IMG/VR virus record: IMGVR_UViG_3300048121_001678
Span: 186,001-250,000 of that record
DNA: 64,000 nt
Direction: 5' to 3' (one strand)
Part shown: in pieces, positions 1 through 19,082 of the stretch
How the letters are laid out: every line of letters starts with the position of its first letter
Position numbering within the stretch: position 1 is the first letter of the stretch
Notes under the pieces: generated by a model
What the model saw: the letters and a program-made list of their open reading frames with translations, nothing else
Told to the model about the DNA's origin: nothing
The model's database searches: none
Made by a program: the position numbers and the translations under genes

Positions 1-2
1 TT

Positions 3-1181: not shown

Positions 1182-1236
1182 TCACCCCCTTTTCTTATTA
1201 CTATTTTTATCTTATACTTTTTAATAAATTAAAAGT

Positions 1237-2454
1237 ATGTCAAAGATAAAAGTATTAGTTTTACCATCTGACCGTACAGGTGTTGGTAAATTCCGTTCAG
1301 TAGAACCCCATATATTCCTACAACAATCATATCCTGAAGATTTTCATGTCGATATTGACTATGAACCAAAACTCAACGATTTAGAGTATTGGAAGAACTA
1401 TGATATGGTGGTTTATCATCGCTCTATTGGTCGTAATCCGAGCCAATCGATAGAGATTATTAAGATGTTAAATAGTATGGGTATTGTTACCGTAATGGAT
1501 TTAGATGATTATTGGTTACCAACAAAAGACCACCCCGCACATAATATTGTAAAGCAAAATAAGATACATCTTTCGATTATTGAGAATTTAAAAGTTGCAC
1601 AACACGTCACAACAACAACTACAATTTTTGCAAATGAAATTAAAAAATACAATAAAAGTGTTTTTGTACTACCAAATGCAATTAACCCTAAAGAACCTCA
1701 ATTCATGGAGGAAACAAAACCATCAGACAAATTAAGATTTGGATGGTTAGGTGGGTCATCTCACTTGGAGGACCTAAAACTACTTAAAGGCTCATTCAAT
1801 AGATTAAAATCGGACAAAGATAAATTTAGGTTATTTTTATGTGGGTTTGACATTCGTGGAACTGTAACTGAAATTAACCAACAAACGGGAGAACAAAAAC
1901 AAAGACCTATCAAACCACATGAAACTGTGTGGTCTGAGTACGAAAATATATTCACAGAAAGAGGTTCATTAATCACACCTGAACATAAGGAGTTCTTATC
2001 TAAGTATATCCCTAACGAAATATATACAGGAGAGGAAGAGCCGTTTTATACTCGTATATGGACTGAACCTGTTACTTCATACGCAAAAAACTACTCAAAT
2101 TTTGATGTGTCATTGGCACCACTAAAAAATCATATTTTCAACAGAGTTAAATCACAATTAAAAGTAATTGAGGCAGGTTTTTATAAGAAAGCATTAATTG
2201 CGTCTGATTTAGGCCCATACACAATAGATTTGACACATTCACTTAAAAATGGTAACTTTGTTGATGGTAACGCACTTTTGGTAAAAGAAAGTCGTAACCA
2301 CTCAGACTGGTCAAAATGGATGAAAAAATTAATCAATAACCCATCGTGGGCAGAAGATTTAGGTGAAAGACTATATGAGACAGTATCTAAAAGATATGAC
2401 TTAAATATTGTAACAGAAACAAGAGCACAAATTTACAAAGAATTAGCAAAATGA
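1237..2454 (+). CDS. GT-B (GT4-like) glycosyltransferase
   Basis: DLDDYW, FGWLGGSSH, APL...FNRVKSQLKVIEAG...ALIASD...PY motifs. Confidence 0.8.
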   Translation: MSKIKVLVLPSDRTGVGKFRSVEPHIFLQQSYPEDFHVDIDYEPKLNDLEYWKNYDMVVYHRSIGRNPSQSIEIIKMLNSMGIVTVMDLDDYWLPTKDHPAHNIVKQNKIHLSIIENLKVAQHVTTTTTIFANEIKKYNKSVFVLPNAINPKEPQFMEETKPSDKLRFGWLGGSSHLEDLKLLKGSFNRLKSDKDKFRLFLCGFDIRGTVTEINQQTGEQKQRPIKPHETVWSEYENIFTERGSLITPEHKEFLSKYIPNEIYTGEEEPFYTRIWTEPVTSYAKNYSNFDVSLAPLKNHIFNRVKSQLKVIEAGFYKKALIASDLGPYTIDLTHSLKNGNFVDGNALLVKESRNHSDWSKWMKKLINNPSWAEDLGERLYETVSKRYDLNIVTETRAQIYKELAK

Positions 2455-3152
2455 TAAACGTACCAAAAACAAAACTACTATTTTTTGATATTGAAACAGT
2501 AGGTATTGAAGAAGATTTTAAAACACTAAAAAAGAACCGACCAGAACTGGCAAAACTTTTTGAGACCTATAAAGGGTGGATTGTTAAACGTTTTCCCGAA
2601 GAGGAGAATAGTACAATTGACGAGATGTTTTATAATAAATCCGCATTAATACCTGAGTTTGCGAAGATAATCGTAGCATCTTTTTCTTTTTATACACCTA
2701 AAGGTGAAATACACACACAAACATTCTCATCAGATGAGGAGGTTGACGTATTAACAGAAATAAAGGGACTACTAAACAAAGTAAGTAAATTAGACTTTTA
2801 CCTATGTGGTCACAATATTAAAAATTTTGACATCCCAATGATTGGGAAGAGAATGTTAATCAATGGAATTAAACCACCATCATTATTACCTCAGTATGAC
2901 ACAAAACCATGGGATATTAAGGCAGTTGATACTATGGAGTTATGGAAATTTGGTAATAACTACTCTATGGCATCCTTAGAACTTATGTGTGTATCTATGG
3001 GTGTTTCATCACCAAAAGAAGGTGAGGTAACAGGAAACATCGTACATCAAACATATTGGGAAACAGGTGGTTTAGACCCGATTGCAAAATATTGTGATGA
3101 AGATGTAGATGTTCTTGCAAAATTAATAGACAAAATATATAACTTAGTATAA
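2451..3152 (+). CDS. DEDD 3'-5' exonuclease (PolB-exo-like)
   Basis: FFDIET (ExoI), GHNIKNFDIP (ExoII), YCDEDV (ExoIII). Confidence 0.85.
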   Translation: MINVPKTKLLFFDIETVGIEEDFKTLKKNRPELAKLFETYKGWIVKRFPEEENSTIDEMFYNKSALIPEFAKIIVASFSFYTPKGEIHTQTFSSDEEVDVLTEIKGLLNKVSKLDFYLCGHNIKNFDIPMIGKRMLINGIKPPSLLPQYDTKPWDIKAVDTMELWKFGNNYSMASLELMCVSMGVSSPKEGEVTGNIVHQTYWETGGLDPIAKYCDEDVDVLAKLIDKIYNLV

Positions 3153-3748
3153 TGGGAAAAATTAAAGATATGACAGAAGGTCTTAGAATGTTAAAAGACC
3201 TAAAAAAAGGATTAGGGGACATTGATATGAATGACCCTCAAAAAATGTTAGATTCAATGGGATTAAACATGGATGAACTTAATAAATCATTTATTGATGC
3301 GTCGTCACCAAAAACAAAATTAAGATACTCATATAAATCAATTAACAAAGAGCCTGAATATGCTTATGATACCGATTCGGGGTTTGATTTAAGGTCAAAC
3401 ATTAAAGTGACTTTAGGTCCATTAGAGAGAACTATGATACCCACAGGTCTTTATTTTGACATACCTGAAGGATATGAAATACAAGTCAGACCTAAGAGTG
3501 GATTAGCAATTAAAAAAGGACTCTCAATGGTTAATACTCCAGGTACTATCGACCAAGGTTACACTGGTGAGGTTAATGTTATCTTAGTAAATTTAAGTAA
3601 TGAAACACACACTATTGAAGTTGGTGATAAAGTAGGTCAGGCGGTTCTTTGTCCTGTGATGGCCGGTAAGTTTGTTGACTTACAAAGGGTTTTAAATGTG
3701 GAAGAAAAAGATAGAGGTAATAACGGATTCGGTTCAACAGGTAATTAA
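3152..3748 (+). CDS. dut: dUTPase with ~50-aa N-terminal extension
   Basis: SGFDL, QVRPKSGLA, PGTIDQGYTGE, VGQAV, RGNNGFGSTG motifs. Confidence 0.95.
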   Translation: MGKIKDMTEGLRMLKDLKKGLGDIDMNDPQKMLDSMGLNMDELNKSFIDASSPKTKLRYSYKSINKEPEYAYDTDSGFDLRSNIKVTLGPLERTMIPTGLYFDIPEGYEIQVRPKSGLAIKKGLSMVNTPGTIDQGYTGEVNVILVNLSNETHTIEVGDKVGQAVLCPVMAGKFVDLQRVLNVEEKDRGNNGFGSTGN

Positions 3749-3749
3749 T

Positions 3750-4136
3750 ATGAATACAGTAAGCCCAACATTACCTGAAGGAATCAAAAATTATCTAATT
3801 GATATCGATGGAACTATAACCGATGATGTACCCAATGAGGAACCTGAAAGAATGATTACTTGTTTACCCTACGAAGGTTCAATAGAAATGATTAATGAGT
3901 GGTATAAAGATGGTCATATAATTACTTTCTTTACTTCTCGTTCTGAAGAACACAGAAAAGTAACTGAAAAGTGGTTTGAAGAACATGGTTATAACTATCA
4001 TAATTTATTGATGAATAAACCACGTGGAGGAAACTATCACTGGATAGATAACCATATCGTTAGAGCGACTCGTTATAATGGTAAATGGACACAATTAAAA
4101 GATAAAGAAACAACAATACAAGTATTTGACGACTAA
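3750..4136 (+). CDS. HAD-superfamily phosphatase
   Basis: IDIDGTI motif I, FFTSR, KP..G; ATG at 3750 follows the dut stop. Confidence 0.75.
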   Translation: MNTVSPTLPEGIKNYLIDIDGTITDDVPNEEPERMITCLPYEGSIEMINEWYKDGHIITFFTSRSEEHRKVTEKWFEEHGYNYHNLLMNKPRGGNYHWIDNHIVRATRYNGKWTQLKDKETTIQVFDD

Positions 4137-6610
4137 TGATAACAATTGGATATAGTACAAAAAAAATAAACCCTGAGTTTAGAGATTACATCGAAAAATC
4201 ATGTGGTGTAAGAGGTGTTGAAGTAATACCTTTTGAAAATCCAGGCTCCCATTCACTTACCGAAGCATATAATATCATTCTTGAGAAATCAAGTAATGAT
4301 ATTGTTGTTTTATGTCATGATGACATCTACTTCGAGAAAAAGAACTGGGGTAACAAAGTGTTGAAACATTTCAAAAGAAATCCTGATTACGGGATTTTAG
4401 GTGTTGCTGGCTCAACTAAATTACCCACATCCGCCAAATGGTGGGAAGAACCTCGAAGAATGAGAGGTATTGTAAATCATGAGCATGAGGGTAAAAAATG
4501 GACATCTAAATATTCAACAAATTTAGGGAATAGAATTGAAGATGTGGTTTTAGTTGATGGGTTGTTTATGGTTCTTAATAAAAATAACATTAAAAAACCA
4601 TTCAACGAAGAGGTTAAGGGGTTCCATATGTATGACGTGGATTTTTGTTTTAGAAACTATATTGAAGAAGTTAAAATTGGTGTCGTTTACGACATTCGAA
4701 TCACTCATCTATCTATTGGTCAAACTAACGAACAATGGGAAAAAAATAGAGAAGAGTTTGCTGAGAGAAATATTAGGTTATTGCCGGTAAGAATAAAAAA
4801 ACATATGGATATTAATTCACCGATAAAAGTTTTAATATCGTCATTATTTTTTAAAACATTTACAGGTTCTGAAATGTATGTCTATGAATTGGCGAAGGAA
4901 CTTATCAAGTTAAATTGTGACGTAACAGTACTTTCAGATATTGATGGTCCACTATCAAAAATTGCGAATAAATATAAAATTAAAACTTTACCACACCACC
5001 AACCACCTGGTTATATTATGGGGGATGGTGTTATTGGTTTTAACACACCACAAGGATTTCATAAAACAGAAAAGGGAAAATTATATCGAAATGGTAATTA
5101 TGATTTTGATATAATTCATGCACAACACAAACCAATAACTGAAAGATTATTACAACTTTACCCTGACCGCCCTAAAGTATCTACGATACATTCTGAGGTT
5201 ATCTCATTAGAAGACCCGGTGATAGATAACACTATAGTTAAGTATATCACAATTAGACCTGAAATAAGTGATAAAATTATAAACCAAAATGGGGTTGAAC
5301 CTAATAAAGTTGAATTAATCTATAACCCATTAGATAATAATAGATTTAACACAAAAAACACTATAGATAAAAATTATATACTTTTTGTCGGTACAATTGA
5401 TTATTTACGAGAAAATACTATCAAAGATATTTCAGAATACGCAAAATCTCAAAGTAAAGAATTGTGGATTGTAGGTGAAAATAAATCTAATTACCTTTCA
5501 GAGTTAACAAAAGAAAACCACGTTAAACATTTTCCCCCGACACACAAAATAGAAAATTTTGTAAAGGAATGTTCTGAAACTGCGGGTATTTTATTAGGAA
5601 GAACTACAATTGAAAGTTGGATGTGTGGTAAACCTTCTTGGATTTATCAAGTGGACGATAAAGGTAGTATACTATCTAAGGAAAGAACTTTACCCCCATC
5701 AGACATCAATAAGTTTTATTCCTCTGAAGTGGCAAAAAAAATTAAGTCTATATATATCGATTCGTTAAATGAATGGGAAAACCTCTTAGACGAAAAAGAT
5801 AAGTTAAATAATGAAAAAATGATTTTTAATGGTAGAAAAATTAAATCTAACAATGTGACTAATTGGGGAGATTTGGTACCATATAAGATTATTAATTCTT
5901 TGTTTGACCACGACATATCAGAAGAAGATGTATTCAATGTCAGACAACCAAATAAAAACTATTCAGTGTACTCAACTGGTAGTGTGATGCATTTCACAAA
6001 AAAAGACAGCGTAGTATGGGGTACCGGATGTATTAAAGAAAATGCAGTTGGAGAAAAACCAAAAAAAGTTTATGCAGTAAGAGGTCCTTTAACCAGACAG
6101 GAACTCCTTAAAAAAGGAATAGAATGTCCTGAAATATACGGTGACCCAGCACTATTGTACCCAATGATTTATAACCCAACTATCGAAAAGAAATATAAAT
6201 GGGGTATCATACCTCATTACATTGAATTTGAATCAGACGAAGACTTAAAGGTCCTAAAAAACTTGGAAAAACAAGGTTTTAAAATTATTGATATCTGCTC
6301 GGGAGAGAAAGAGTTTATCGACCAATTATTAGAAGTTGAAAATGTAATATCTTCAAGTTTACACGGACTAATAGTTGCGGATACATACGGCATACCGAAT
6401 GCGAGAGTCAATATTTCAAATAAATTAATCGGTGGTAATTTTAAGTTTAAGGACTATTGTTTATCTGTTAGTAGAAAAATTGATTTAGGTTATCAATTAA
6501 ATTGTGAAACCACATTAGACGAAATATCGCAGATACATTTTAACACTTCAATAGTATTTGATAAAGATAAATTAATAAAATCAAATCCTTGGAATGTTAG
6601 AAATATCTAA
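4136..6610 (+). CDS. fusion of GT2-like, GT4-like and polysaccharide pyruvyltransferase domains
   Basis: N-term LCHDD/GFHMYDVDF; middle FTGSEMYVYELAKEL...GRTTIE; C-term NWGD, AVRGPLTR, GDPALL, SSSLHGLIVAD. Confidence 0.8.
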   Translation: MITIGYSTKKINPEFRDYIEKSCGVRGVEVIPFENPGSHSLTEAYNIILEKSSNDIVVLCHDDIYFEKKNWGNKVLKHFKRNPDYGILGVAGSTKLPTSAKWWEEPRRMRGIVNHEHEGKKWTSKYSTNLGNRIEDVVLVDGLFMVLNKNNIKKPFNEEVKGFHMYDVDFCFRNYIEEVKIGVVYDIRITHLSIGQTNEQWEKNREEFAERNIRLLPVRIKKHMDINSPIKVLISSLFFKTFTGSEMYVYELAKELIKLNCDVTVLSDIDGPLSKIANKYKIKTLPHHQPPGYIMGDGVIGFNTPQGFHKTEKGKLYRNGNYDFDIIHAQHKPITERLLQLYPDRPKVSTIHSEVISLEDPVIDNTIVKYITIRPEISDKIINQNGVEPNKVELIYNPLDNNRFNTKNTIDKNYILFVGTIDYLRENTIKDISEYAKSQSKELWIVGENKSNYLSELTKENHVKHFPPTHKIENFVKECSETAGILLGRTTIESWMCGKPSWIYQVDDKGSILSKERTLPPSDINKFYSSEVAKKIKSIYIDSLNEWENLLDEKDKLNNEKMIFNGRKIKSNNVTNWGDLVPYKIINSLFDHDISEEDVFNVRQPNKNYSVYSTGSVMHFTKKDSVVWGTGCIKENAVGEKPKKVYAVRGPLTRQELLKKGIECPEIYGDPALLYPMIYNPTIEKKYKWGIIPHYIEFESDEDLKVLKNLEKQGFKIIDICSGEKEFIDQLLEVENVISSSLHGLIVADTYGIPNARVNISNKLIGGNFKFKDYCLSVSRKIDLGYQLNCETTLDEISQIHFNTSIVFDKDKLIKSNPWNVRNI

Positions 6611-7235
6611 AGTACCCATAGTTTTACATAGTATGGATTCTTATAGCAAGTTTTGGAATAATTGGTTTTTACTATTTAAAAAATTTTGTATTAACCACGG
6701 TCCGATATTTTTCTTATCTGAAGAAAAAGAACCTGACTTTGTTAGTGATGTGACACATATAAAAACAGGTAAAGGTGAATGGGGAGAGAGACTCATATAT
6801 GGGTTATCTAAAATAGATAGCGATTTAGTTATATATATGCAAGAGGACTTTTGGTGTGTCAATGAATTGATTTTAAATGATACTTACATAAAATTATTTA
6901 AAGATTTAAATATGTCTCAGTTACACATAAAGGGTCTACCAGTCGAAGTTAAACGCCACTTATCCCTTACAAATATTGAGGGTAACTTATATAAATTTAA
7001 CCAAGATTCGAATTACACACAAAACCACCAATTTGGTTTATGGAAAAAAAATAAGTTACTTGATAATATTTTACCATACGAGAATCCTTGGGATAATGAA
7101 ATAAATGGCACAAAAAGACTTAACAAAAACCCTCACAATATCTATATTATTAACCATGAGTGGTACACAACAGTATCAAGGAAAGGTCAATTAATGAAGA
7201 GAGGAAAAGAAATAATAAAAAAATATAATTTATGA
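6594..7235 (+). CDS. putative glycosyltransferase-like protein
   Basis: W..RL...L, YMQEDFW and PWDNE motifs; located in the sugar cluster. Confidence 0.5.
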   Translation: MLEISKVPIVLHSMDSYSKFWNNWFLLFKKFCINHGPIFFLSEEKEPDFVSDVTHIKTGKGEWGERLIYGLSKIDSDLVIYMQEDFWCVNELILNDTYIKLFKDLNMSQLHIKGLPVEVKRHLSLTNIEGNLYKFNQDSNYTQNHQFGLWKKNKLLDNILPYENPWDNEINGTKRLNKNPHNIYIINHEWYTTVSRKGQLMKRGKEIIKKYNL

Positions 7236-7798
7236 AACATTTTTATGAGAATTTACATGGCTGGTTTAATAATGGTTATCCAGGTGCGTATGAAAAAATA
7301 TTTACACATTTTAAAACTGAACCAACACATATAGTTGAGTTAGGTGTATGGCAAGGTAAGAGTTCAGCATATTTAGGCGTTGAGTTATTTAATCACGGGT
7401 GGGTTAATGTTAAAGTTGACTTAATAGACCATTTTAATGGTTCTGAAGAACATCAAAACAGTTCGATATGGGATAACTCAAATATATATGATAAAACAGT
7501 TAATAACCTACAACCACTAAAAGGTAAAATTAATTATGAGATAATTAATTTAGATTCTAAAAACGCATCATTAAAATATGAAGATGAAAGCTTAGACTTT
7601 ATTTTTATTGATGCTTCTCATGATTATAAATCTGTTAAAGAGGATATTGAACTATGGTACCCTAAAATTAAAAAAGGTGGTATTATTAGTGGTGACGACT
7701 ACTGCTCCGATTGGAAATCTGTAATACAAGCAGTTGACGAGGCTTTCGGAAAAAGAGTAGTTTTTTTAGAGAATAAACACTGGTGGGTTGAAAAATAA
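7232..7798 (+). CDS. class I SAM methyltransferase (Methyltransf_24-like)
   Basis: VELGVWQGKS, FIFIDASHDY, GGIISGDDY. Confidence 0.85.
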   Translation: MKHFYENLHGWFNNGYPGAYEKIFTHFKTEPTHIVELGVWQGKSSAYLGVELFNHGWVNVKVDLIDHFNGSEEHQNSSIWDNSNIYDKTVNNLQPLKGKINYEIINLDSKNASLKYEDESLDFIFIDASHDYKSVKEDIELWYPKIKKGGIISGDDYCSDWKSVIQAVDEAFGKRVVFLENKHWWVEK

Positions 7799-7806
7799 AA
7801 ACACTT

Positions 7807-8451
7807 ATGTCTAAAGGAGTTTATAGAAATACCGAAGAGTTTGAGGAAAGATTGTCTCACTATACCGGTGCAAAATATGTTGTAACCGTGGATAATATGA
7901 GTAACGGTTTATTTCTATCACTATATTATGAACATTATGTTAATAAGACGATAAAAACCGATACAATAATAATACCCAATAGAACTTATCCATCAGTCCC
8001 ATGCGAAATAATTCATGCAGGTTTAAAGGTTGGTTGGGACATAGTTGATGGTGAAACGATAACGGGGTCATACCAACTAAAAGGTTCGAATATATGGGAC
8101 TCTGCGTTATCTTTCACGTCTGATATGTATAAACCTAACACACATATGTGTATTTCTTTTACAGGTCCATATAAACACTTTAAATTATCGAAAGGTGGTG
8201 CAATATTAACCGACGATTTAAAGGCATATCATTGGTTTAAAAGGGCCAGATATTCTGGTAGACGAGAATGTTCCTATCATGATGATAATTTAGATATGTT
8301 AGGATGGAACTTTTATATGATGCCTGAGTTATCGGCTAGAGGATTATTACTAATGAATCAATTTTATAATATGGACGGGACTAAAAAACAACAAAAAGAT
8401 TTGACGTTACCTTACCCTGATTTATCAAAATTTAAAATATACCAACAATGA
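7807..8451 (+). CDS. short DegT/DnrJ/EryC1/StrS-type sugar aminotransferase
   Basis: FEERL..YTGAKY, TYPSVP, SFTGPYK (PLP Lys), GGAILTDD, GWNFYM. Confidence 0.75.
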   Translation: MSKGVYRNTEEFEERLSHYTGAKYVVTVDNMSNGLFLSLYYEHYVNKTIKTDTIIIPNRTYPSVPCEIIHAGLKVGWDIVDGETITGSYQLKGSNIWDSALSFTSDMYKPNTHMCISFTGPYKHFKLSKGGAILTDDLKAYHWFKRARYSGRRECSYHDDNLDMLGWNFYMMPELSARGLLLMNQFYNMDGTKKQQKDLTLPYPDLSKFKIYQQ

Positions 8452-9035
8452 AAAAGGCATTAATTGGATATGGTGGTCACGCACGTGAGGTTATGGCTCA
8501 AATGGGTACTAAACTAACGTGTTTTGTGGATGATGAATATGTGACAGAATATACTAAACCTATCTCCGAATTTAATCCTTTAGAATATACCCTAATGGTT
8601 GCAATTGCAGATTCTACCGATAGATTTAATATGATACAAAGACTACCTAAAGAAACTAAATTTTTTACATTTATTCATAAAACTTCACAAATTATAGGTG
8701 ATGATGTAATAATTGGTGAAGGTAGTTTTATTGGTGCTAATTCAATACTAACAACTAATATTAAACTAGGGAAACATACGATACTAAATAGAGGTAATCA
8801 CGTAGGTCACGATACTATTATTGGTGATTATTTTAGTGCGATGCCAGGGGCAATAATATCAGGAAATGTAAACATAGGTAATTGTGTTTATATAGGTACA
8901 AACTCATCTGTTAGGGAAAAAATAAATATAACAAGTAATACTATATTAGGTCTTAATTCTGGTGTAGTAAAAGATATAAGTATTGAAGGAACTTATGGGG
9001 GGTGTCCAGTTAAATTATTAAATTATGGAGAGTAA
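8448..9035 (+). CDS. PglD/NeuD-type sugar acetyltransferase
   Basis: GYGGHAREV, hexapeptide repeats, VGHD. Confidence 0.85.
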   Translation: MKKALIGYGGHAREVMAQMGTKLTCFVDDEYVTEYTKPISEFNPLEYTLMVAIADSTDRFNMIQRLPKETKFFTFIHKTSQIIGDDVIIGEGSFIGANSILTTNIKLGKHTILNRGNHVGHDTIIGDYFSAMPGAIISGNVNIGNCVYIGTNSSVREKINITSNTILGLNSGVVKDISIEGTYGGCPVKLLNYGE

Positions 9036-9804
9036 CTACCTTAATCCGTCTTTGACTGATTTAGAAACCGTTAAATTAATTAAAGAAAAAATCGAAAGTA
9101 ATACCCCGTTCGCACTAACAAGATTTGGTGATGGTGAAATATATATATTAAATAGAAATGCTAGTGAACATTTTTTGAAAAAAAACCTAAATGAATGGGG
9201 GTATAATTATCCATCTCAGATTAATGAATTTTATGATGATGCTAATACCATATTAAAAAGGTCAATAGTACTATCGGATGTTATTGGGTTAATGAACCCT
9301 AATTGTGTAATTGCAAAACATATTAATTACAAGAGTAGTGTGTGGTCTTTGAAAAAGGAGGATATTGTATCTTTCGGGGCCGATATATCAAAATTGAAGA
9401 TATGTAATCACATGATTAGTAGAAGTGAAATTATGGGTTCCCTACAAGGATTTAAAAACATAATACAAGGTAAAAGTTTTCATATTATTTCTCGTAATAC
9501 TAATGAAATGAAAAATAGAAAATTAGAAGACCTATTTAATGTGAAAATTACTTATACTCATCACCCTAACAATATTAATTTTAACAATAGAGAGGACTTC
9601 ATTAGTGGATTTAAAGACATAAAAGAGGATATCGTAATTATGGGTGTGGGACTACAAAAAGATTATGGTATAATTTTAAGAGATAATTATGGTAAGATTG
9701 CTTTAGATATGGGAGCCACTATGGATGCGTGGTCAGGTATAATTAGTCGACCGTGGTTTAATAATGGAAACTTACAAGATTACTTAATTCTAAAAAATAA
9801 TTAA
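9025..9804 (+). CDS. GT-D fold (DUF1792-like) glycosyltransferase
   Basis: LTRFGDGE and ALDMGATMDAW motifs. Confidence 0.65.
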   Translation: MESNYLNPSLTDLETVKLIKEKIESNTPFALTRFGDGEIYILNRNASEHFLKKNLNEWGYNYPSQINEFYDDANTILKRSIVLSDVIGLMNPNCVIAKHINYKSSVWSLKKEDIVSFGADISKLKICNHMISRSEIMGSLQGFKNIIQGKSFHIISRNTNEMKNRKLEDLFNVKITYTHHPNNINFNNREDFISGFKDIKEDIVIMGVGLQKDYGIILRDNYGKIALDMGATMDAWSGIISRPWFNNGNLQDYLILKNN

Positions 9805-9807
9805 ATA

Positions 9808-10626
9808 ATGAAAAATGTAGTAGGAATTATTGGAAATGGTTTTGTAGGGGAATCACAGGCGTTTGCCTTTTCACCAACAAACGAGATAAGAATATATGAT
9901 ATTGACTCATTGAGGTCTACACATACGTTAGAGGAGACTCACGAGTCAGACTTTGTATTTGTTTGTGTACCAACACCAATGACTATTGAGGGTAAACAAG
10001 ATTTGACGTTTATAGAAAATGTATTTAAGGATTCTAAGAAAGGTCCAATCTATATTATTAAATCAACTGTTTTGCCTGGTACCACAGAAAAACTGCAAAA
10101 AAAATACCCAAATTTAAACATAATTTTCTCACCTGAGTTCCTAACAGAAAGAACCGCAAAATTGGATATGTTAACTCAGTCGAGAGTAATTTTTGGTGGT
10201 GAAAAACACTTAACTGATAAGGTTGAAGAACTTTTTAGTGGTAGATTCATGAATAGACATTTTATACATACAGACTCTAAAACCGCAGAATTTATAAAGT
10301 ATATGAATAATACATATTTTGCAACTAAGGTATCAATTATGAATGAATACTACAGGTTGGCCGAATTAGTGGGGGTTAATTGGGAAGATGCACTATATGG
10401 TTTTGCATCGGACGGTAGAGTTGGTGATTCACACTTACACGTGCCGGGTCCTGATGGTAAAGTTGGATTTGGCGGTACTTGTTTTCCAAAAGACATCAAT
10501 GCACTTATGAATATGGCAAAAGACGTAGGAGTTAACATGAATGTTTTAGAAGCGGCATGGAAAACAAATTTAGAAGTTAGACCTGAGCAAGACTGGACTA
10601 AGTTAAAAGGTCGTGCGATTTCATAA
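9808..10626 (+). CDS. UDP-glucose/GDP-mannose dehydrogenase family protein (lacks C-terminal domain)
   Basis: GNGFVG, VCVPTP, IKSTVLPG, SPEFL, GFGGTCFPKD. Confidence 0.85.
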   Translation: MKNVVGIIGNGFVGESQAFAFSPTNEIRIYDIDSLRSTHTLEETHESDFVFVCVPTPMTIEGKQDLTFIENVFKDSKKGPIYIIKSTVLPGTTEKLQKKYPNLNIIFSPEFLTERTAKLDMLTQSRVIFGGEKHLTDKVEELFSGRFMNRHFIHTDSKTAEFIKYMNNTYFATKVSIMNEYYRLAELVGVNWEDALYGFASDGRVGDSHLHVPGPDGKVGFGGTCFPKDINALMNMAKDVGVNMNVLEAAWKTNLEVRPEQDWTKLKGRAIS

Positions 10627-10717
10627 TAGTATAAGGGGTTACTTTCATTAGTTTATTACTAATTTAGGTATTAGTTTAGTGTATTAAACACGACCTAAAA
10701 TTATTTTAAATAAGTTA

Positions 10718-11428
10718 ATGGCAACAAAAGGAAAAAAAGTAGATATCACTACTAAAAAATCACGTAAAGAGATAATTCGTGAAATTATTGGAAGAACACC
10801 AAGAAAAAAATTCTTATCTGAAAATCAAAAAGTTTACTACAATCATCTAACAGACAACGAAATAACGATATGTACAGGACCTGCGGGTGTTGGTAAATCA
10901 TATGTTGCTATGAGTGCTGCAGTACAATTACTTCTTGATGAAAACAATTCTTATGAAAAAATAATTATCGTAAGACCAGCTGTCGAAGCAGAAGAAAAAT
11001 TAGGTGCACTGCCTGGTAACTTAGAAGAAAAGTTAGACCCATATATATTTCCATCATATTATTTACTAAATAAAATAGTTGGTAAGAGTGTTAGGGAAAA
11101 ATTAAAAGAATACGATATAATTGAGGTGTTTGCCTTGGCATACATGAGAGGTATGAATATTGATAACTCAATATTAATTTTTGAGGAGGCACAAAATTCA
11201 ACACCATCACAGATGAAGTTATTATTGACAAGAATAGGATTTAATAGTAAATTCTTTATATCGGGTGATATTGAACAAACTGACCGTTATAAAGATAAAA
11301 CACAATCAGGTCTTTATGACGCAATGAATAAGTTTTCAGATTTACCTGAAGTGGGTACTTTTAATTTTGAAAATGAAGATATAATTAGAAACCCAATAAT
11401 TGGTAAAATATTAAAAAAATACGAATGA
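10718..11428 (+). CDS. phoH: PhoH family ATPase
   Basis: GPAGVGKS, RPAVEAEEKLGALPG, AYMRG, EEAQN, LLTRIG, GDIEQTD. Confidence 0.95.
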   Translation: MATKGKKVDITTKKSRKEIIREIIGRTPRKKFLSENQKVYYNHLTDNEITICTGPAGVGKSYVAMSAAVQLLLDENNSYEKIIIVRPAVEAEEKLGALPGNLEEKLDPYIFPSYYLLNKIVGKSVREKLKEYDIIEVFALAYMRGMNIDNSILIFEEAQNSTPSQMKLLLTRIGFNSKFFISGDIEQTDRYKDKTQSGLYDAMNKFSDLPEVGTFNFENEDIIRNPIIGKILKKYE

Positions 11429-12024
11429 AAATTGCATTTGAAATAAATGGTGTTTTAAGGAATACTTTTGGTAAGGCTGAGGAAGTTTATCAAAAATTCT
11501 TTATTGATGATTACATAAAAGGTGAGGATGAAGAAGAGTTTGAATTTAGATTAAATCTCCCAATAACCTCAACGACTCTAAGTCAACATTTTGTTTTCCC
11601 CGATGAGGAGAGACTTATGGAGTTTTTCTATGTGGATTTCCCTATGAATATTTTTGGTCATTCACAGTCAACTGAAACTTCAACATTTCATGACTTAAAT
11701 GACATATACAAAGATTTAAGGGAAAATCATGAGTTAGTAATTATTTCTAATGAAATTGAGAAATCAAAACCAGCAACATTATTTTTTCTATCTAAGTTTG
11801 GATGTATGTTTGAAAAAATATTATTTTATAATCAATATACTGAGAAAGATATATTATCAGATGTTGATATTATAGTATCCACTCAACCACAAATTTTAGA
11901 TTCCGAATACGGTTTTAAAACCATAAAATATAAAACTACATATAATGAAAATACGTCCTCTGATTTTGAGATTGAAACCTTAAAAGGATTTAAAGACTTA
12001 TATGAAAAACTAAATTTAAAATGA
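11425..12024 (+). CDS. hypothetical protein, degenerate HAD/5'(3')-nucleotidase-like
   Basis: KIAFEINGVLR resembles the IGIDIDGVL motif with the Asp residues replaced. Confidence 0.45.
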   Translation: MKIAFEINGVLRNTFGKAEEVYQKFFIDDYIKGEDEEEFEFRLNLPITSTTLSQHFVFPDEERLMEFFYVDFPMNIFGHSQSTETSTFHDLNDIYKDLRENHELVIISNEIEKSKPATLFFLSKFGCMFEKILFYNQYTEKDILSDVDIIVSTQPQILDSEYGFKTIKYKTTYNENTSSDFEIETLKGFKDLYEKLNLK

Positions 12025-12320
12025 TTGAAATTTTAGGACACCTTTATTACATTGATTTATCAGAATTAGAGAATTTTGTAGAATTAGACACACCAAAATC
12101 AGTAGGAAAAGAAGAGGGAAGTAGTGATGAATTAAAGGACTACCAACACTTCTCTATTATTAAGTATGAGGTTATCAAAACAATGATTGAAGTAATACTA
12201 ACAGAAAGAGAAGAACTTGATGATAATTTAGGTATTCACACATCAAGAAATACAAGTATTCCCTTTCGTGTAGCTTTTAATACATTATTAAGACATAATA
12301 TAATTAAATTTATCGACTAA
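12021..12320 (+). CDS. hypothetical protein
   Basis: Translationally coupled (ATGA and TAATG overlaps). Confidence 0.7.
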   Translation: MIEILGHLYYIDLSELENFVELDTPKSVGKEEGSSDELKDYQHFSIIKYEVIKTMIEVILTEREELDDNLGIHTSRNTSIPFRVAFNTLLRHNIIKFID

Positions 12321-13384
12321 TGGACCAAGAAACAATTAAAAAAGTTGAAGTCTCTATAGAAAAATTAAGAGACAAAACATCGAGAATTTACCTTATGGTA
12401 CAAGATACTAAGGGTAACGCAAAAGCCAGTATCAGATACACGTATCAAATGGCTTTAACACTAAAAAATAATGGATTTAACCCCATTATATTACATGAAT
12501 CTAACGACTATACGGGCGTTGGGGCGTGGATGGGAGATGAGTATATGGAAATCACTCATCAATCAATTGAAGGTCAAAACCTTCAAATAACACCTGAAGA
12601 CTTTGTAATTATCCCTGAACTATATGGTCACGTTATGGACCAAATCAAAGATTTACCATGTGGTAAAATTGTTTTGTGTCAAGCGTATGATTACATGTTG
12701 GAAACAGTTCAACCAGGTATGAATTGGTCAAATTATGGTTTTTTAAAGTGTATTACCACTAATGAGACACAAAAAGAATTTATCAGTGGAATTATGAAGA
12801 ATACATCCCTTGATGTCGTTACACCTTTAATACCTGAAATTTTCACTAAGAAGTCAATTCCGGCAAAACCGATTATCTCAATTCACACACGTGACCAAAG
12901 AGACACAATGAAAATCATAAAGTCATTCTACTTAAAATACCCTCAATTTAGATGGATTACTTTCCGTGATATGAGAGGTTTGAATCAGGAAGAATTTGTT
13001 ACTAACCTACAAGAATCATTCGTATCTGTATGGGTGGATGATATTAGTGGTTTAGGGACTTATCCACTTGAAAGTATGGCTTGTGGTACACCAGTAATTG
13101 GTAAAGTACCTAATATGAAACCTGAGTGGATGTTAGACACAAATGGAGTATGGACTTATGAGGTAAATAATATGGTGGATATCATCGCAGAATATACACA
13201 GAATTGGTTAGAAGATAACATATCTGAGAGTCTTTACGAGTCTGGATATGAGACTTCATCAAAATACCAACAAACAGAAGAGTTTGAAACTAACATAGTA
13301 TCTCTGTTTACATCATACTTGAAATCGAGAATGGAGTCATTTCAATCTCAAATTGATAAATTAACAGTAAAAGAAGAAGAATAA
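12320..13384 (+). CDS. GT-B (GT4-like) glycosyltransferase
   Basis: GLGTYPLESMACGTPVIG. Confidence 0.8.
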   Translation: MDQETIKKVEVSIEKLRDKTSRIYLMVQDTKGNAKASIRYTYQMALTLKNNGFNPIILHESNDYTGVGAWMGDEYMEITHQSIEGQNLQITPEDFVIIPELYGHVMDQIKDLPCGKIVLCQAYDYMLETVQPGMNWSNYGFLKCITTNETQKEFISGIMKNTSLDVVTPLIPEIFTKKSIPAKPIISIHTRDQRDTMKIIKSFYLKYPQFRWITFRDMRGLNQEEFVTNLQESFVSVWVDDISGLGTYPLESMACGTPVIGKVPNMKPEWMLDTNGVWTYEVNNMVDIIAEYTQNWLEDNISESLYESGYETSSKYQQTEEFETNIVSLFTSYLKSRMESFQSQIDKLTVKEEE

Positions 13385-13386
13385 TT

Positions 13387-14184
13387 ATGAAAGATATATC
13401 AGTAGTTCTCCCTATTGAGAGCTCAAAACACAAAAATTTTGTAGAGTTGTTTACAAACGCAATTAAATCAATTCAAAATCAATCAGTACCACCAAAAGAG
13501 CTAGTGTTAGTTCATTCTAATGAAGAGTCTTTAGTCGAGTTTTTAACTAACTTCGAATTTAGTGGTTTAACTGTTAATATGGTTGAAAATAAAGGTAACA
13601 CTGATTTTGCATCGCAAATGAATTTAGGTGTAGAAAAATCAGAGTCTGAATGGGTTTCATTTTTAGAATTTGACGATGAGTATGCAACTATATGGTTTAA
13701 AAATGTTCAAACATTTATAGAAGCACATCCAAATGTCGGAGGATTCTTATCGTTAGTTGTTGATGTTGACCACAAAGGTCAATTTGCTGGTTTCACAAAT
13801 GAGGCTACTTTCGCAGCGTCAATGAACACAGAAATTGGTTATTTAACCAATGAAGTCTTACTCGATTATCAAAACTTCCAATCTGCAGGTATGGTAATTA
13901 ATAAAAAAACATATCAGGATATGGGTGGTTTTAAACCGTCTTTTAAACTCACATTCGTATATGAATTCTTATTAAGATTAACATATAACTCGGTTAAAAT
14001 TATGACAATACCTAAAATTGGGTATAAGCACCTTAACATGAGAGAAGGTTCTATATTTTGGAACTATAAAAATGGAGATAATAAAGTTACTGAAGACGAG
14101 ATTAGATTTTGGTTAGACTCGGCAAAAAAAGAGCATTTCTTTACTGAAGATAGAAACATAAAATATGAATCTGAAACTGTTTAA
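13387..14184 (+). CDS. GT2 glycosyltransferase
   Basis: ISVVLP, SIQNQ, NLGV...EWVSFLEFDD, MGGF. Confidence 0.8.
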   Translation: MKDISVVLPIESSKHKNFVELFTNAIKSIQNQSVPPKELVLVHSNEESLVEFLTNFEFSGLTVNMVENKGNTDFASQMNLGVEKSESEWVSFLEFDDEYATIWFKNVQTFIEAHPNVGGFLSLVVDVDHKGQFAGFTNEATFAASMNTEIGYLTNEVLLDYQNFQSAGMVINKKTYQDMGGFKPSFKLTFVYEFLLRLTYNSVKIMTIPKIGYKHLNMREGSIFWNYKNGDNKVTEDEIRFWLDSAKKEHFFTEDRNIKYESETV

Positions 14185-14939
14185 TGTTTTTATCAGGAGA
14201 CACAAACGGTCCGTTACCTACACCAACTAAAAAAAGAGGTAGGAAACCAAAACCGGGTAGTAATTATTTTGATGTGAGAGAAGAGAATGCCGTTAGGATG
14301 TTTCTCACCGCCTCCACAACAACAGAAAAGAATGAGATTTATAATGAATTTTTAAAAGCACCATTAGATAAAATGATTGAGTCTATTATCAGAAGATATA
14401 AACTTTATCGTAAAGGAATGGATTTTAGAGATATACATGTAGATACACATTCTTTTCTAATTACTAAAGTAGATAAATTTAAACCAGCAAAAGGTAAGAA
14501 AGCATATTCTTATTTTGGTACTATTTGTAAAAACTATTTGATGGGTCAAATCATCAAAGACCAAAAAGACCAAAATAGAAAGATATCTTACGAAGACATA
14601 TCATCATCATTAGAAAGTAGACCTGACTTAATATATCATTTAGAACATGATGTTGTTGAACCAAGTCAGGTTATTAAACATTTTTTAAAGGAAATGGAAG
14701 AGTTTATGGATAAAACTAATTTAAATAAAAATGAAGTTAAATTGGGTTATGCGTTAATGGAGTTGTTTGAAAATTATGAAACTATTTTTATTGGTACTGA
14801 TAATAATAAATTTAATAAAAATATCATATTACTCTCATTAAGAGAAATGACGAATTTATCCACTAAAGAAATCAGAACCTCAATGAAGAAATATAAAACA
14901 CTGTATTATAATTTGGTTAAAAAAATCAATAATATATAA
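14184..14939 (+). CDS. phage sigma factor, T4 gp55-like (late transcription)
   Basis: NYF...KM...II..Y...KFKPAKGKKAYSYFGTICKN resembles sigma region 2 of gp55 (F.P.K..NPFAYFT.I). Confidence 0.6.
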   Translation: MFLSGDTNGPLPTPTKKRGRKPKPGSNYFDVREENAVRMFLTASTTTEKNEIYNEFLKAPLDKMIESIIRRYKLYRKGMDFRDIHVDTHSFLITKVDKFKPAKGKKAYSYFGTICKNYLMGQIIKDQKDQNRKISYEDISSSLESRPDLIYHLEHDVVEPSQVIKHFLKEMEEFMDKTNLNKNEVKLGYALMELFENYETIFIGTDNNKFNKNIILLSLREMTNLSTKEIRTSMKKYKTLYYNLVKKINNI

Positions 14940-14954
14940 AATTTAGACCAAAGA

Positions 14955-14961
14955 TATTTAT
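14955..14961 (+). promoter_or_regulatory. late-promoter-like motif TATTTAT
   Basis: Recurrent motif 5-50 nt upstream of structural genes; here inside the palindrome TATTTATAAATA. Confidence 0.55.
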
Positions 14962-14966
14962 AAATA

Positions 14967-17298: not shown

Positions 17299-17299
17299 G

Positions 17300-17497: not shown

Positions 17498-17500
17498 GAG

Positions 17501-19060: not shown

Positions 19061-19082
19061 GTATTTATAGTAAAAACGAATA

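What the first reader, a model, noticed from the sequence alone, without database searches (positions are those of the whole stretch)
1237..14184. 13-kb phage glycosylation cluster directly upstream of the late sigma factor and structural genes
Seen: about seven glycosyltransferase domains (GT4-like x3, GT2 x2, GT-D, one GT-like). Also present are a pyruvyltransferase domain, methyltransferase, sugar aminotransferase, N-acetyltransferase, UDP-sugar dehydrogenase and HAD phosphatase, mostly translationally coupled. GT25 and RmlC lie elsewhere in the window. No flippase, polymerase or membrane priming transferase is present, so the acceptor looks cytoplasmic. Inference: the cluster builds a complex pyruvylated, methylated, N-acetyl-amino-sugar glycan on virion proteins (as in giant viruses) or on DNA. 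It does not look like host serotype conversion.
Basis: partly seen in the sequence, partly recalled or inferred. Interest (0 to 1): 0.6.

Follow-up and report, generated by a model that had tools for sequence, protein, structure and literature searches.

The report
Swappable sugar-gene island in marine jumbo phage
A 297-kb marine T4-like phage carries a block of soluble sugar-adding enzymes with an exchangeable 5-kb middle part, next to giant mucin-like late proteins, so the phage probably coats its own particle proteins with a variable glycan, though no experiment shows this yet.

Summary
Window 1237-14184 holds six firm glycosyltransferase domains, a pyruvyltransferase-like domain, an O-methyltransferase and a NeuD/PglD-type acetyltransferase. 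The "aminotransferase" is a virus-specific half-size DegT. The "dehydrogenase" lacks the C-terminal domain but is under strong purifying selection. The block is not purely glyco: an exonuclease, dUTPase, HAD phosphatase, PhoH and two unknown genes are interleaved.

New findings:
- 55 related viral contigs share the same frame. Conserved GTs flank a hypervariable cassette (121 protein clusters).
- A relative 96-98% identical in the flanks carries an unrelated fucose-type cassette. The breakpoints are at 4776 and 9811, and metagenome contigs break at the same places.
- No multi-pass membrane protein exists in the cassettes, or any Wzx/Wzy/WecA-like one in the genome.
- ThyA is canonical and no C5-methyltransferase was found.
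- The genome encodes six late proteins with about 4,950 residues of Pro/Thr/Ser mucin-like repeats. Two lie directly upstream, and this arrangement is conserved in 39 of 55 loci.
- The nearest characterised relatives of two GTs elongate glycans on proteins in the cytoplasm.

Best reading (about 0.5): cytoplasmic O-glycosylation of virion fibre proteins. This resembles giant-virus fibril glycosylation, with cassette exchange diversifying the glycan. It is unproven.

The parts
1237..2454 (+). Core glycosyltransferase, GT-B/GT4-like, 405 aa. Conserved in 49 of 55 related loci.
   Evidence: PHROG 7162 at E 4e-47. The AF2 model (pLDDT 86) matches GlgM, BshA, MshA and PglA in Foldseek at E about 1e-12. 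Synteny.
2451..3152 (+). 3'-5' exonuclease (PolB-exo/RNase H-like). Not a sugar gene.
   Evidence: Pfam DNA_pol_B_exo2 at E 6e-10.
3152..3748 (+). dUTPase with a 65-aa N-terminal extension.
   Evidence: Pfam dUTPase at E 4e-23. NCBIfam NF001862 scores 148 bits against a cut-off of 103.
3696..4136 (+). Small HAD-superfamily phosphatase-like protein. Present in only 14 of 55 loci.
   Evidence: Pfam Acid_phosphat_B and HAD_PNKP at E about 1e-6. Distribution.
4136..6610 (+). Three-domain enzyme: GT-A (Glyco_tranf_2_5, residues 28-209), GT-B (GT4, 244-402 and beyond) and a pyruvyltransferase-like domain (about 567-824). The first 540 aa are conserved across the lineage. The C-terminal domain is fused only in close relatives.
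   Evidence: Domains. Lineage conservation. The pyruvyltransferase-like domain is about 40% identical to ORFs in Lak phages and Cobetia phage Carin-5.
4776..9811 (+). Exchangeable cassette. It holds the GT4 and pyruvyltransferase parts of g4136, g6594, the methyltransferase, the half-size DegT, the acetyltransferase and GT-D.
   Evidence: L004 is 97.8% and 95.6% nt identical on the two sides, with no similarity between them. Its 7.3-kb replacement carries GT2, GT11, GT10, FkbM, hexapeptide and Gmd genes. Metagenome contigs end at 4750 and at 9807-9816.
6594..7235 (+). Unknown 213-aa protein of a virus-only family. Possibly GT-A-like.
   Evidence: No Pfam, PHROG or NCBIfam hit. The Atlas finds viral hypothetical clusters. 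The nearest named cluster is 25% GT2 at score 0.94.
7232..7798 (+). SAM-dependent O-methyltransferase (Methyltransf_24/TylF-like). Deleted in one natural variant.
   Evidence: Pfam hits at E 5e-18 and 1.5e-6. A contig in run X5 skips 7246-7769.
7807..8451 (+). Half-size DegT-like protein of 214 aa.
   Evidence: Pfam DegT matches only residues 6-75. The Atlas finds three virus-only clusters of 207-215 aa.
8448..9035 (+). NeuD/PglB/VioB-family amino-sugar N-acetyltransferase.
   Evidence: TIGR03570 at E 2e-42 over the full length, scoring 144.9 bits against a cut-off of 160.8. Hexapep and PglD_N hits.
9025..9804 (+). GT-D fold glycosyltransferase.
   Evidence: Pfam GT-D-like at E 4e-9, above the cut-off. 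NCBIfam GT-D_rel at E 4e-8.
9808..10626 (+). Short nucleotide-sugar dehydrogenase-like protein without the C-terminal UDP-binding domain. It forms the right anchor of the cassette.
   Evidence: TIGR03026 at E 1e-51, covering profile positions 63-295 of 413. GNGFVG and GGTCFPKD motifs are present and dN/dS is 0.03-0.04.
10718..11428 (+). PhoH-like ATPase. Not a sugar gene.
   Evidence: Pfam PhoH at E 3e-63.
11425..12320 (+). Two conserved proteins of unknown function (199 and 99 aa).
   Evidence: No family hits. Conserved in 17 loci.
12320..13384 (+). Core GT-B glycosyltransferase related to Actinobacillus Agt/AmGGT. Those enzymes elongate glucose chains, and Agt does so on glycopeptides in the cytoplasm.
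   Evidence: The family profile hits PDB 8XSG at E 7e-13. Enzymology from PMC12159676.
13387..14184 (+). Core GT2 (GT-A) glycosyltransferase.
   Evidence: Pfam Glycos_transf_2 at E 1.5e-9.
14184..14939 (+). Sigma-factor-like protein of 251 aa.
   Evidence: Nearly all of the top 50 Foldseek hits of its model are sigma factors, but all at E of 0.03 or worse, and the model pLDDT is 65. No profile hit.
14954..14962 (+). First late-type promoter motif (ATATTTATA) after the block. The next one is at 19061.
   Evidence: NTATTTATA occurs 91 times in the genome, 53 of them within 100 nt upstream of a same-strand start. It precedes the portal, prohead protease and MCP-operon genes.
50445..51209 (-). GT25 glycosyltransferase outside the block.
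   Evidence: PF01755 at E 1e-12.
59540..60178 (+). RmlC-like dTDP-sugar 3,5-epimerase outside the block.
   Evidence: PF00908 at E 2e-50.

Best explanation
The block is a phage-encoded, fully cytoplasmic glycosylation system.

**Enzymes**
- A conserved set of soluble glycosyltransferases is present across the lineage. It comprises g1237 (GT4-like), the GT2_5 and GT4 domains of g4136, the Agt-like g12320 and the GT2 g13387.
- These would build a core glycan from host nucleotide sugars.
- An exchangeable cassette would add and tailor the outer sugars. In this phage it holds a GT4 variant, a pyruvyltransferase-like domain, an O-methyltransferase, a half-size DegT, a NeuD-type acetyltransferase and GT-D.

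**Acceptor**
- The most likely acceptors are the phage's own late proteins. The best candidates are six giant proteins with hundreds to about 2,000 residues of Pro/Thr/Ser mucin-like repeats.
- Two of these are encoded directly upstream on the opposite strand.
- They would be O-glycosylated before or during virion assembly and would form glycosylated fibres or decorations.

**Diversification**
- Recombination at two fixed anchors swaps cassettes. The anchors are the end of the GT2_5 domain and the start of the short dehydrogenase gene.
- Near-identical phages would therefore display different glycans.

**Shown versus inferred**
- Shown: gene content, absence of membrane machinery, cassette exchange, the mucin-like proteins and their synteny.
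- Inferred: the acceptor, the glycan and the timing.
For: - **Soluble enzymes only.** No cluster protein and 0 of 538 cassette proteins have two or more TM-like segments. No Wzx/Wzy/WecA-like protein exists in the 297-kb genome.
- **Lineage-wide frame.** 55 IMG/VR loci share the frame of conserved GTs around a variable region of 0.9 to more than 10 kb. The variable regions hold 121 protein clusters rich in GT11, GT2, FkbM methyltransferase, epimerase/dehydratase, DegT, sulfotransferase, GT25 and NodZ families.
- **Cassette swap.** L004 is 97.8% and 95.6% identical in the flanks, and 98.3% identical upstream including the start of the mucin-like gene. Its cassette is unrelated and fucose-type.
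- **Population evidence.** Contigs from independent seawater metagenomes break at 4750 and 9807-9816. In one run the flank contigs have about 5 times the depth of this cassette's contig.
- **Mucin-like proteins.** Six proteins carry about 4,950 residues of such repeats (Thr 21-33%, Pro 10-15%, Ser 11-14% in the four whose composition was tabulated). Four of the six have the late promoter motif.
- **Conserved neighbourhood.** A Pro/Thr/Ser-rich large ORF sits at the same upstream position in 39 of 55 loci.
- **Structural context.** The lectin-like C-terminus of one mucin-like protein matches PHROG 'virion structural protein' (E 1e-14). Another weakly matches Hoc-like head decoration. Their neighbours are tail and virion proteins.
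- **Characterised relatives act on protein-linked glycans in the cytoplasm.**
  - The g12320 family matches Agt/AmGGT.
  - GT-D was first described for dGT1, an enzyme that glycosylates serine-rich-repeat adhesins (my own knowledge). A GT-D-like protein also sits in the Megavirus fibril cluster.
- **Promoters.** The only recognisable promoter at the head of the + strand block (window about -1250) is of the late type.
- **Concentration of GTs.** Genome-wide searches with the GT2, GT1, GT25 and GT41 Pfam models hit only this block plus the one GT25 gene.
Against: - There are no proteomic, glycan or expression data. No RNA runs hold the sequence.
- Transcription timing is not established. The 16-kb block has no internal late motif and may have unrecognised early or middle promoters.
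- No initiating protein O- or N-glycosyltransferase could be identified by homology. No GT41/NGT was found.
- The GT-B fold of g1237 is generic and says nothing about the acceptor.
- Nucleotide-metabolism genes are interleaved. Homologues of g1237 and of the pyruvyltransferase-like domain sit in replication or nucleotide-metabolism neighbourhoods in Justusliebigvirus and Cobetia phage Carin-5. That pattern is also compatible with a nucleic-acid target.
- Peripheral GTs that act on host lipid-linked intermediates also lack TM segments.
- Adjacency of mucin-like genes is association, not proof. Two loci with full upstream flanks (L009, L052) showed no such ORF at my threshold.
Confidence: 0.5

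Rival explanations
1. Host envelope remodelling. The soluble phage GTs act at the inner face of the membrane on host undecaprenyl-linked O-antigen, capsule or LPS intermediates. They rely on host priming, flipping and ligation. The aim would be to change the infected cell's surface, for example to exclude superinfection or stop progeny binding to debris.
For: The enzyme families are those of O-antigen and capsule loci: GT2, GT4, GT11, GT25, FkbM, pyruvyltransferase, NeuD-type acetyltransferase and Gmd. Hypervariability between near-identical genomes mimics O-antigen loci. Peripheral GTs of such pathways need no TM segment (my own knowledge).
Against: No priming transferase, flippase, polymerase, ligase or ABC transporter occurs in the genome or in 538 cassette proteins. 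The core GTs are conserved across a large lytic T4-like lineage and embedded between structural modules. The only promoter recognised at the head of the block is late-type. A host Wzx or Wzy would have to accept many unrelated glycans.
Confidence: 0.2
2. DNA hypermodification. The GTs attach mono- to oligosaccharides to a modified base in phage DNA to evade restriction. This would resemble T-even glucosylation or the MT/5mYOX/GT clusters.
For: An exonuclease, dUTPase, HAD phosphatase and PhoH are interleaved with the GTs. g1237 homologues lie beside primase/helicase and DNA polymerase in Justusliebigvirus. The pyruvyltransferase-like domain's homologue in Cobetia phage Carin-5 lies among exonuclease, dNMP kinase and nucleotide nucleosidase genes. 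Phage GTs repurposed from LPS or teichoic-acid enzymes do glycosylate 5hmC. T4 alpha-glucosyltransferase appears among the fold matches of g1237 (rank 32).
Against: The single thymidylate-synthase homologue is a canonical ThyA. It scores 345 bits and passes three equivalog cut-offs. No C5 DNA methyltransferase was found. No TET/JBP hit was found, though the control did not ring. The dUTPase is canonical. Cassettes with five to ten sugar-tailoring genes (fucosyltransferases, sulfotransferases, methyltransferases) exceed any known DNA glycan.
Confidence: 0.12
3. The enzymes make a free or lipid- or small-molecule-linked oligosaccharide. Possible roles include a decoy, an osmolyte, a storage glycan or a signalling glycan. 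Alternatively they act on host cytoplasmic proteins rather than on virion components.
For: The best fold matches of g1237 (GlgM, BshA, MshA) use small soluble acceptors. AmGGT itself elongates free oligosaccharides, not glycopeptides.
Against: This does not explain conserved synteny with mucin-like late proteins. It also does not explain strain-level cassette diversification, which is typical of exposed surfaces.
Confidence: 0.1

Closest known systems
Megavirinae (Mimivirus, Megavirus, Moumouvirus) fibril glycosylation gene clusters
   Same: Both are virus-encoded clusters of soluble enzymes. Both combine a pyruvyltransferase, a SAM methyltransferase, an amino-sugar N-acetyltransferase, multi-domain GTs and a GT-D-like protein. 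In both, gene content differs between related viruses. In Megavirinae the target is a fibril layer on the capsid (PMC10117803).
   Different: Here the host is a bacterium and the virus a T4-like tailed phage. The phage lacks complete nucleotide-sugar pathways, with no SDR dehydratase and only a half-size DegT. Variation here occurs by sharp cassette replacement between genomes 96-98% identical in the flanks, not only between clades. The candidate acceptors are mucin-like Pro/Thr/Ser proteins. No glycan has been shown here.
Mycobacteriophage virion glycosylation (Che8, Corndog, Myrna type)
   Same: Phage-encoded GTs modify the phage's own structural proteins in the bacterial cytoplasm. This is as summarised in PMC12619734; the primary paper was not held.
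   Different: In those phages the glycans sit at the C-termini of capsid and tail-tube subunits and only a few GT genes are involved. Here there are at least six GT domains plus tailoring enzymes, a hypervariable cassette, and giant repeat proteins as likely acceptors. No sequence relationship was tested.
Bacterial cytoplasmic protein glycosylation: serine-rich-repeat adhesin pathway (GtfA/B, GT-D dGT1) and the NGT/Agt system of Actinobacillus
   Same: Both use soluble GT-B, GT-A and GT-D enzymes that elongate glycans on Ser/Thr-rich or Asn sites of large surface proteins before export. The g12320 family is homologous to Agt/AmGGT at E 7e-13. A GT-D is present.
   Different: No GT41/NGT was found. 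No GtfA/B orthologue was identified. AmGGT itself prefers free oligosaccharides. The acceptors here are viral.
O-antigen/capsule loci and phage serotype-conversion modules
   Same: The enzyme families are the same. Both show strain-level replacement of a central variable region between conserved flanks.
   Different: No priming transferase, Wzx, Wzy, ABC transporter or Gtr-type membrane protein is present. The carrier is a lytic-type T4-like jumbo phage, not a temperate converter.
'Moraphages' (large aquatic phages with predicted Bacteroidota hosts; PMC12619734)
   Same: Genomes are 200-307 kb and the MCP is related to Rhodothermus phage RM378 and ERM phages. PhoH is common to both. Four core orthologous groups are annotated as glycosyltransferases of unknown role.
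   Different: Membership is not established. The class II lysyl-tRNA ligase found in most moraphages is absent here. This phage is from seawater. That paper describes neither the cassette nor the mucin-like proteins.

Membership tests
Virus-encoded autonomous virion glycosylation (giant-virus or mycobacteriophage type) | Virus encodes soluble GTs and needs no lipid-carrier or export machinery. | tested here: met
   At least six GT domains. No multi-TM proteins in the block or the 55 relatives' cassettes, and no Wzx/Wzy/WecA-like protein in the genome.
Virus-encoded autonomous virion glycosylation (giant-virus or mycobacteriophage type) | Glycan is covalently attached to virion structural proteins. 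| not testable with these tools
   This needs glycoproteomics. Only candidate acceptors were found: mucin-like late proteins.
Virus-encoded autonomous virion glycosylation (giant-virus or mycobacteriophage type) | Virus encodes sugar-nucleotide tailoring enzymes that match the glycan. | tested here: inconclusive
   An acetyltransferase, a methyltransferase, a pyruvyltransferase-like domain and RmlC are present. No SDR dehydratase or epimerase was found. The DegT is half-size and the dehydrogenase lacks its C-terminal domain.
O-antigen/capsule pathway or phage serotype conversion | Initiating phosphoglycosyl transferase, flippase or ABC transporter, polymerase, or GtrA/GtrB/Gtr(type). | tested here: not met
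   Hydropathy scan: the whole genome has no protein with six or more TM-like segments. The only protein with more than three is a 1,736-aa protein with five clustered hydrophobic stretches, which I take to be tape-measure-like (inference, not tested). 0 of 538 cassette proteins have two or more.
Phage DNA sugar hypermodification | An enzyme that makes a hydroxymethyl-pyrimidine: dCMP or dUMP hydroxymethylase, or C5-methyltransferase plus TET/5mYOX. | tested here: not met
   The single PF00303 homologue is a ThyA equivalog at 345 bits. No PF00145 hit. No PF12851 hit, but the control genomes did not ring, so the TET part is inconclusive.
Phage DNA sugar hypermodification | A GT that flips and glycosylates a DNA base. 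| not testable with these tools
   The g1237 fold is generic GT-B. T4 AGT appears only at rank 32 with TM 0.56.
NGT/Agt cytoplasmic N-glycosylation | An HMW1C/NGT (GT41) initiating enzyme together with an Agt elongating enzyme. | tested here: not met
   An Agt-like GT is present at E 7e-13. No GT41 was found in six frames.
Serine-rich-repeat-type O-glycosylation | A Ser/Thr-rich repeat acceptor plus soluble GTs that include GT-D. | tested here: inconclusive
   Acceptor-like proteins and a GT-D are present. No GtfA/GtfB orthologue was identified, and g1237 is only generically GT4-like.
T4 gp55-type late sigma factor (g14184) | Recognisable sigma region 2 fold or sequence. | tested here: inconclusive
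   No Pfam, PHROG, NCBIfam or PDB sequence hit. The model has pLDDT 65. Its top hits are nearly all sigma factors, at E 0.03-0.7.

The most novel reading that the evidence does not exclude
Widespread marine jumbo phages, probably infecting Flavobacteriia, carry mucin-like virion fibres that are heavily O-glycosylated. The glycan is built entirely by phage enzymes in the host cytoplasm. It is diversified among co-occurring strains by exchange of a sugar-gene cassette between two fixed recombination anchors. This would be a viral equivalent of bacterial O-antigen serotypes.
Probability: 0.35. Interest if true: 0.85.

Novelty: new variant of a known kind. Interest (0 to 1): 0.66.

Why it matters
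Autonomous glycosylation of virions is established for giant eukaryotic viruses and for a few mycobacteriophages. It is not known as a general, diversifying trait of abundant marine phages.

If the reading is right:
- Tailed phages can carry mucin-like glycoprotein coats.
- Glycan "serotypes" exist in phage populations, maintained by cassette recombination.
- The many "LPS or glycosyltransferase auxiliary genes" in marine phage genomes may need re-interpretation as virion-modifying genes rather than host-modifying genes.
- Virion stickiness, stability, grazing, decay and adsorption in the sea could all be affected.
- The system would supply a large set of soluble, modular GTs and tailoring enzymes for glyco-engineering.

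The hypothesis is directly testable by co-expressing a repeat fragment with the core GTs.

Tried and rejected
**Searches that found nothing useful**
- Megablast of the block against 50,697 phage records gave no match.
- PDB sequence searches gave nothing significant for g1237, g4136, g14184, g9025 and the pyruvyltransferase-like domain.
- hhalign of the g12320 and g1237 families showed no detectable relationship.
- A GTDB-representative scan for cellular homologues of the GT2_5-GT4 fusion found one weak hit, in Draconibacterium. That method finds only close relatives, so I do not claim the fusion is phage-specific.
- Literature searches for phage mucin-like or Thr-rich virion proteins with GTs, and for Stephanstirmvirinae GT function, returned nothing relevant. 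The primary mycobacteriophage glycosylation paper is not held.

**Promoter and terminator scans**
- The T4 late motif TATAAATA precedes only 19 of 327 genes. I replaced it with the motif actually enriched here, TATTTATA.
- The sigma-70 promoter scan gave 109 hits against 108 expected and is uninformative. No + strand terminators lie in the block.
- A two-box Bacteroidetes promoter scan (TTTG-N17-21-TAnnTTTG) gave 37 hits against 12 expected. None lies in front of a block gene.

**Family checks**
- GT41/NGT was not found. SDR epimerase or dehydratase was not found.
- Class II LysRS, used as a moraphage marker, was not found.
- I initially read g9808 as a decaying gene remnant. I rejected this after finding its motifs and a dN/dS of 0.03-0.04.

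**Other**
- Searches were coordinate, term or frame slips and were corrected where needed.
- No alternative genetic code was used.

Full report
**Context.** The window is bases 186001-250000 of a 297,164-bp IMG/VR virus record rated 99% complete, with a roughly 206-bp end overlap. GC is about 32%.
- It is a T4-like phage. Gp23-type MCP lies at 23931-25661(-) and prohead protease at 27433-28152(-). Portal lies at 30122-31996(-) and TerL at 32046-33821(-).
- The nearest isolates by MCP are Flavobacterium phages (41%), Microcystis phage Mel-JY01 (43%) and Rhodothermus phage RM378.
- A Bacteroidota host is likely. The two-box motif TTTG-N17-21-TAnnTTTG occurs 37 times against 12 expected, 11 of them just upstream of genes. 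SprB repeats occur in two phage proteins.
- The exact cassette sequence occurs in at least 18 independent seawater or marine metagenome studies. All are DNA runs.

**What is in 1237-14184.** Eighteen co-directional, mostly overlapping ORFs.

Firm glycosyltransferase domains:
- g1237 is a GT-B/GT4-like fold. The model has pLDDT 86 and matches GlgM, BshA, MshA and PglA.
- g4136 has a GT-A domain (PF13712, E 2e-29) and a GT4 domain (E 1e-9).
- g9025 is GT-D.
- The g12320 family profile hits PDB 8XSG at E 7e-13.
- g13387 is GT2.

Tailoring enzymes:
- A pyruvyltransferase-like C-terminal domain of g4136 (E 4e-9).
- A TylF/Methyltransf_24 methyltransferase.
- A NeuD/PglB/VioB-type acetyltransferase (E 2e-42).

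- g7807 is a 214-aa member of a virus-only half-size DegT family.
- g9808 is a 272-aa nucleotide-sugar-dehydrogenase-like protein. It keeps GxGxxG and GGTCFPKD but lacks the C-terminal UDP-binding domain. It evolves at dN/dS 0.03-0.04, so it is maintained.

Interleaved non-sugar genes are a PolB-exo-like exonuclease, a bona fide dUTPase, a small HAD protein, PhoH and two unknowns.

g14184 is sigma-like only by a low-confidence fold. GT25 and RmlC elsewhere in the window are confirmed. The genome has no SDR dehydratase or epimerase.

**The block is a lineage-wide frame around an exchangeable cassette.** A search with g4136 found 55 related viral loci.
- The shared order is g3, a WYL-like gene, g603, g1237, exonuclease, dUTPase, sometimes HAD, then GT2_5-GT4. 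A variable region of 0.9 to more than 10 kb follows. After it come PhoH, two unknowns, the Agt-like GT, GT2, the sigma-like gene, g14967 and g15355.
- The variable regions hold 538 ORFs in 121 clusters, half of them singletons.
- A Pfam census of 112 representatives is dominated by these families:
  - glycosyltransferases: GT2, GT25, NodZ and GT7, with GT11 as the family of the largest cluster (38 loci);
  - tailoring enzymes: FkbM and other methyltransferases, hexapeptide acetyltransferases and sulfotransferases;
  - sugar-nucleotide enzymes: epimerase/dehydratases and DegT.
- Locus L004 is 97.8% nt identical over window 1-4776, 95.6% over 9811-13539 and 98.3% upstream. It has no similarity in between.
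- L004's 7.3-kb replacement encodes GT2, GT11, a hexapeptide transferase, FkbM, GT10, a half-size DegT and GDP-mannose 4,6-dehydratase.
- The breakpoints lie at the end of the GT2_5 domain inside g4136 and at the start of g9808. L052 shows the same breakpoints.
- Contigs of four unrelated seawater runs laid on 4300-10200 end at 4750 and 9807-9816.
  - In run X5 the flank contigs have depth 56-59, this cassette's contig 11, and flank-to-unlike joints 44. This fits coexisting cassettes.
  - The tool warns that contig depth is coarse, so I rest mainly on where the contigs break.
  - The same run's cassette lacks 7246-7769, which is the methyltransferase gene.

**Where does the glycan go?**
- *Not through a classical envelope pathway encoded by the phage.* No cluster protein and none of the 538 cassette proteins has two or more TM-like segments. 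The genome has no Wzx/Wzy/WecA-like protein.
- *DNA is unlikely.* The only thymidylate-synthase homologue is a canonical ThyA, passing three equivalog cut-offs. No C5-methyltransferase was found. TET/JBP was not found, although that control was silent.
- *Context still keeps the DNA rival alive.* g1237 homologues sit by primase and polymerase in Justusliebigvirus. The pyruvyltransferase-like domain's homologue in Cobetia phage Carin-5 sits among nucleotide-metabolism genes. Phage GTs can put up to trisaccharides on 5hmC.
- *A candidate protein acceptor exists.* Six proteins carry about 4,950 residues of Pro/Thr/Ser repeats.
  - They are at genome 174232-177585, 177640-182541, 89222-96721, 111822-115148, 115276-120930 and 87662-89140, all on the - strand.
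  - Composition, tabulated for four of them, is Thr 21-33%, Pro 10-15% and Ser 11-14%. That is mucin-like.
  - Four of the six have the late motif upstream.
  - NTATTTATA occurs 91 times, 53 of them within 100 nt of a same-strand start. It precedes the portal, prohead protease and MCP-operon genes.
  - The first two genes lie immediately upstream of, and divergent from, the GT block. A Pro/Thr/Ser-rich large ORF is at that position in 39 of 55 loci. Most of the others are truncated there.
  - One has a C-terminal ConA-like lectin domain matching PHROG 'virion structural protein'. Another weakly matches Hoc-like decoration. Their neighbours are tail and virion proteins.
- *The nearest characterised relatives of two GTs act on protein-bound glycans in the cytoplasm.*
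  - Agt/AmGGT is the relative of the g12320 family.
  - GT-D was first described for dGT1, an enzyme acting on serine-rich-repeat adhesins (my own knowledge). A GT-D-like protein also sits in the Megavirus fibril cluster.
- *Promoters.* The only promoter recognised at the head of the + strand block, at about window -1250, is late-type. The next ones are at 14954 and 19061.

**Comparison with known systems.**
- The gene content parallels Megavirinae fibril glycosylation clusters. Those combine a pyruvyltransferase, a methyltransferase, an acetyltransferase, multi-domain GTs and a GT-D-like protein, with clade-specific content.
- Phage virion glycosylation is known in mycobacteriophages, as summarised.
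- 'Moraphages' were reported with four core GT groups of unknown role. Membership of this phage is not established. Neither the cassette nor the mucin-like proteins are described there.
- I found no paper on mucin-like phage proteins paired with GT islands. This is limited to the held library.

**Verdict.**
- The best-supported mechanism, at about 0.5, is cytoplasmic glycosylation of the phage's own late, mucin-like structural proteins. A conserved GT core would act together with an exchangeable tailoring cassette.
- Rivals are host-envelope remodelling (0.2), DNA hypermodification (0.12) and a free or other acceptor (0.1).
- All functional statements are inference from sequence, synteny and population data. 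None has been tested experimentally.

Noticed in passing
window 48463-48852 (+): The phage encodes a full-length tmRNA (Rfam RF00023, 82.5 bits). ARAGORN reads an unusual tag ending in VAVA. A two-box Bacteroidetes-type promoter (TTTG...TAnnTTTG) lies at 48402-48432, just upstream.
   Followed up: partly
genome 174232-182541(-), which is window -11768..-3459. Also genome 87662-96721(-) and 111822-120930(-).: Six giant proteins carry about 4,950 residues of Pro/Thr/Ser mucin-like repeats, up to 2,047 in one 2,499-aa protein. The first two lie outside the finding's coordinates but are central to its interpretation.
   Followed up: yes
window 7807-8451 (+): This half-size (about 210 aa) DegT-like protein belongs to virus-only clusters of 50-100 members. 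It retains an SF...K...GG-like stretch that could hold the PLP lysine. Its function is unknown.
   Followed up: partly
window 9808-10626 (+): This nucleotide-sugar dehydrogenase-like protein lacks the whole C-terminal UDP-binding domain yet evolves at dN/dS 0.03-0.04. Distant versions of about 260 aa occur in most related loci.
   Followed up: partly
whole genome. In the window, for example at 14954 and 19061, and upstream of 27433-28152(-) and 30122-31996(-).: The late-promoter-like motif is NTATTTATA, not the T4 TATAAATA. 53 of 91 copies lie within 100 nt upstream of a same-strand start.
   Followed up: yes
window 10608-10698 (+): A long imperfect hairpin (GGTCGTG...CACGACC, -22 kcal/mol, z -2.1) followed by a U-rich stretch sits in the only sizeable intergenic gap of the block, before PhoH. 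It may be a terminator or a regulatory element.
   Followed up: partly
window 7246-7769: A natural variant in a 2017 marine metagenome (run X5) lacks 522 nt, nearly the whole methyltransferase gene. The cassette is otherwise near-identical.
   Followed up: no
L060:2884-4269(-) and L061:12276-17930(-), which are genome 84884-86269 and 115276-120930.: SprB repeats, a gliding-adhesin repeat of Flavobacteria, occur in two phage proteins. This hints at the host or at surface mimicry.
   Followed up: no
window 11425-12024 (+): This conserved 199-aa protein starts like a HAD or 5'-nucleotidase (MKIAFEINGVL), but the two catalytic Asp positions read E and N. It may be an inactive HAD-like protein. This comes from reading the sequence only.
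   Followed up: no
window 15355-20552 (+): The three large late genes after the block (647, 519 and 489 aa) have no family hits. They diverge much faster than their neighbours, at 34-71% identity where the flanks are 70-90%. The 519- and 489-aa proteins were each found in only one relative. They may be receptor-binding or decoration proteins.
   Followed up: no
genome 267776-268453 (outside the window): A cluster of five tRNA genes: Arg-TCT, Met-CAT, Thr-TGT, Ser-TGA and Tyr-GTA.
   Followed up: no
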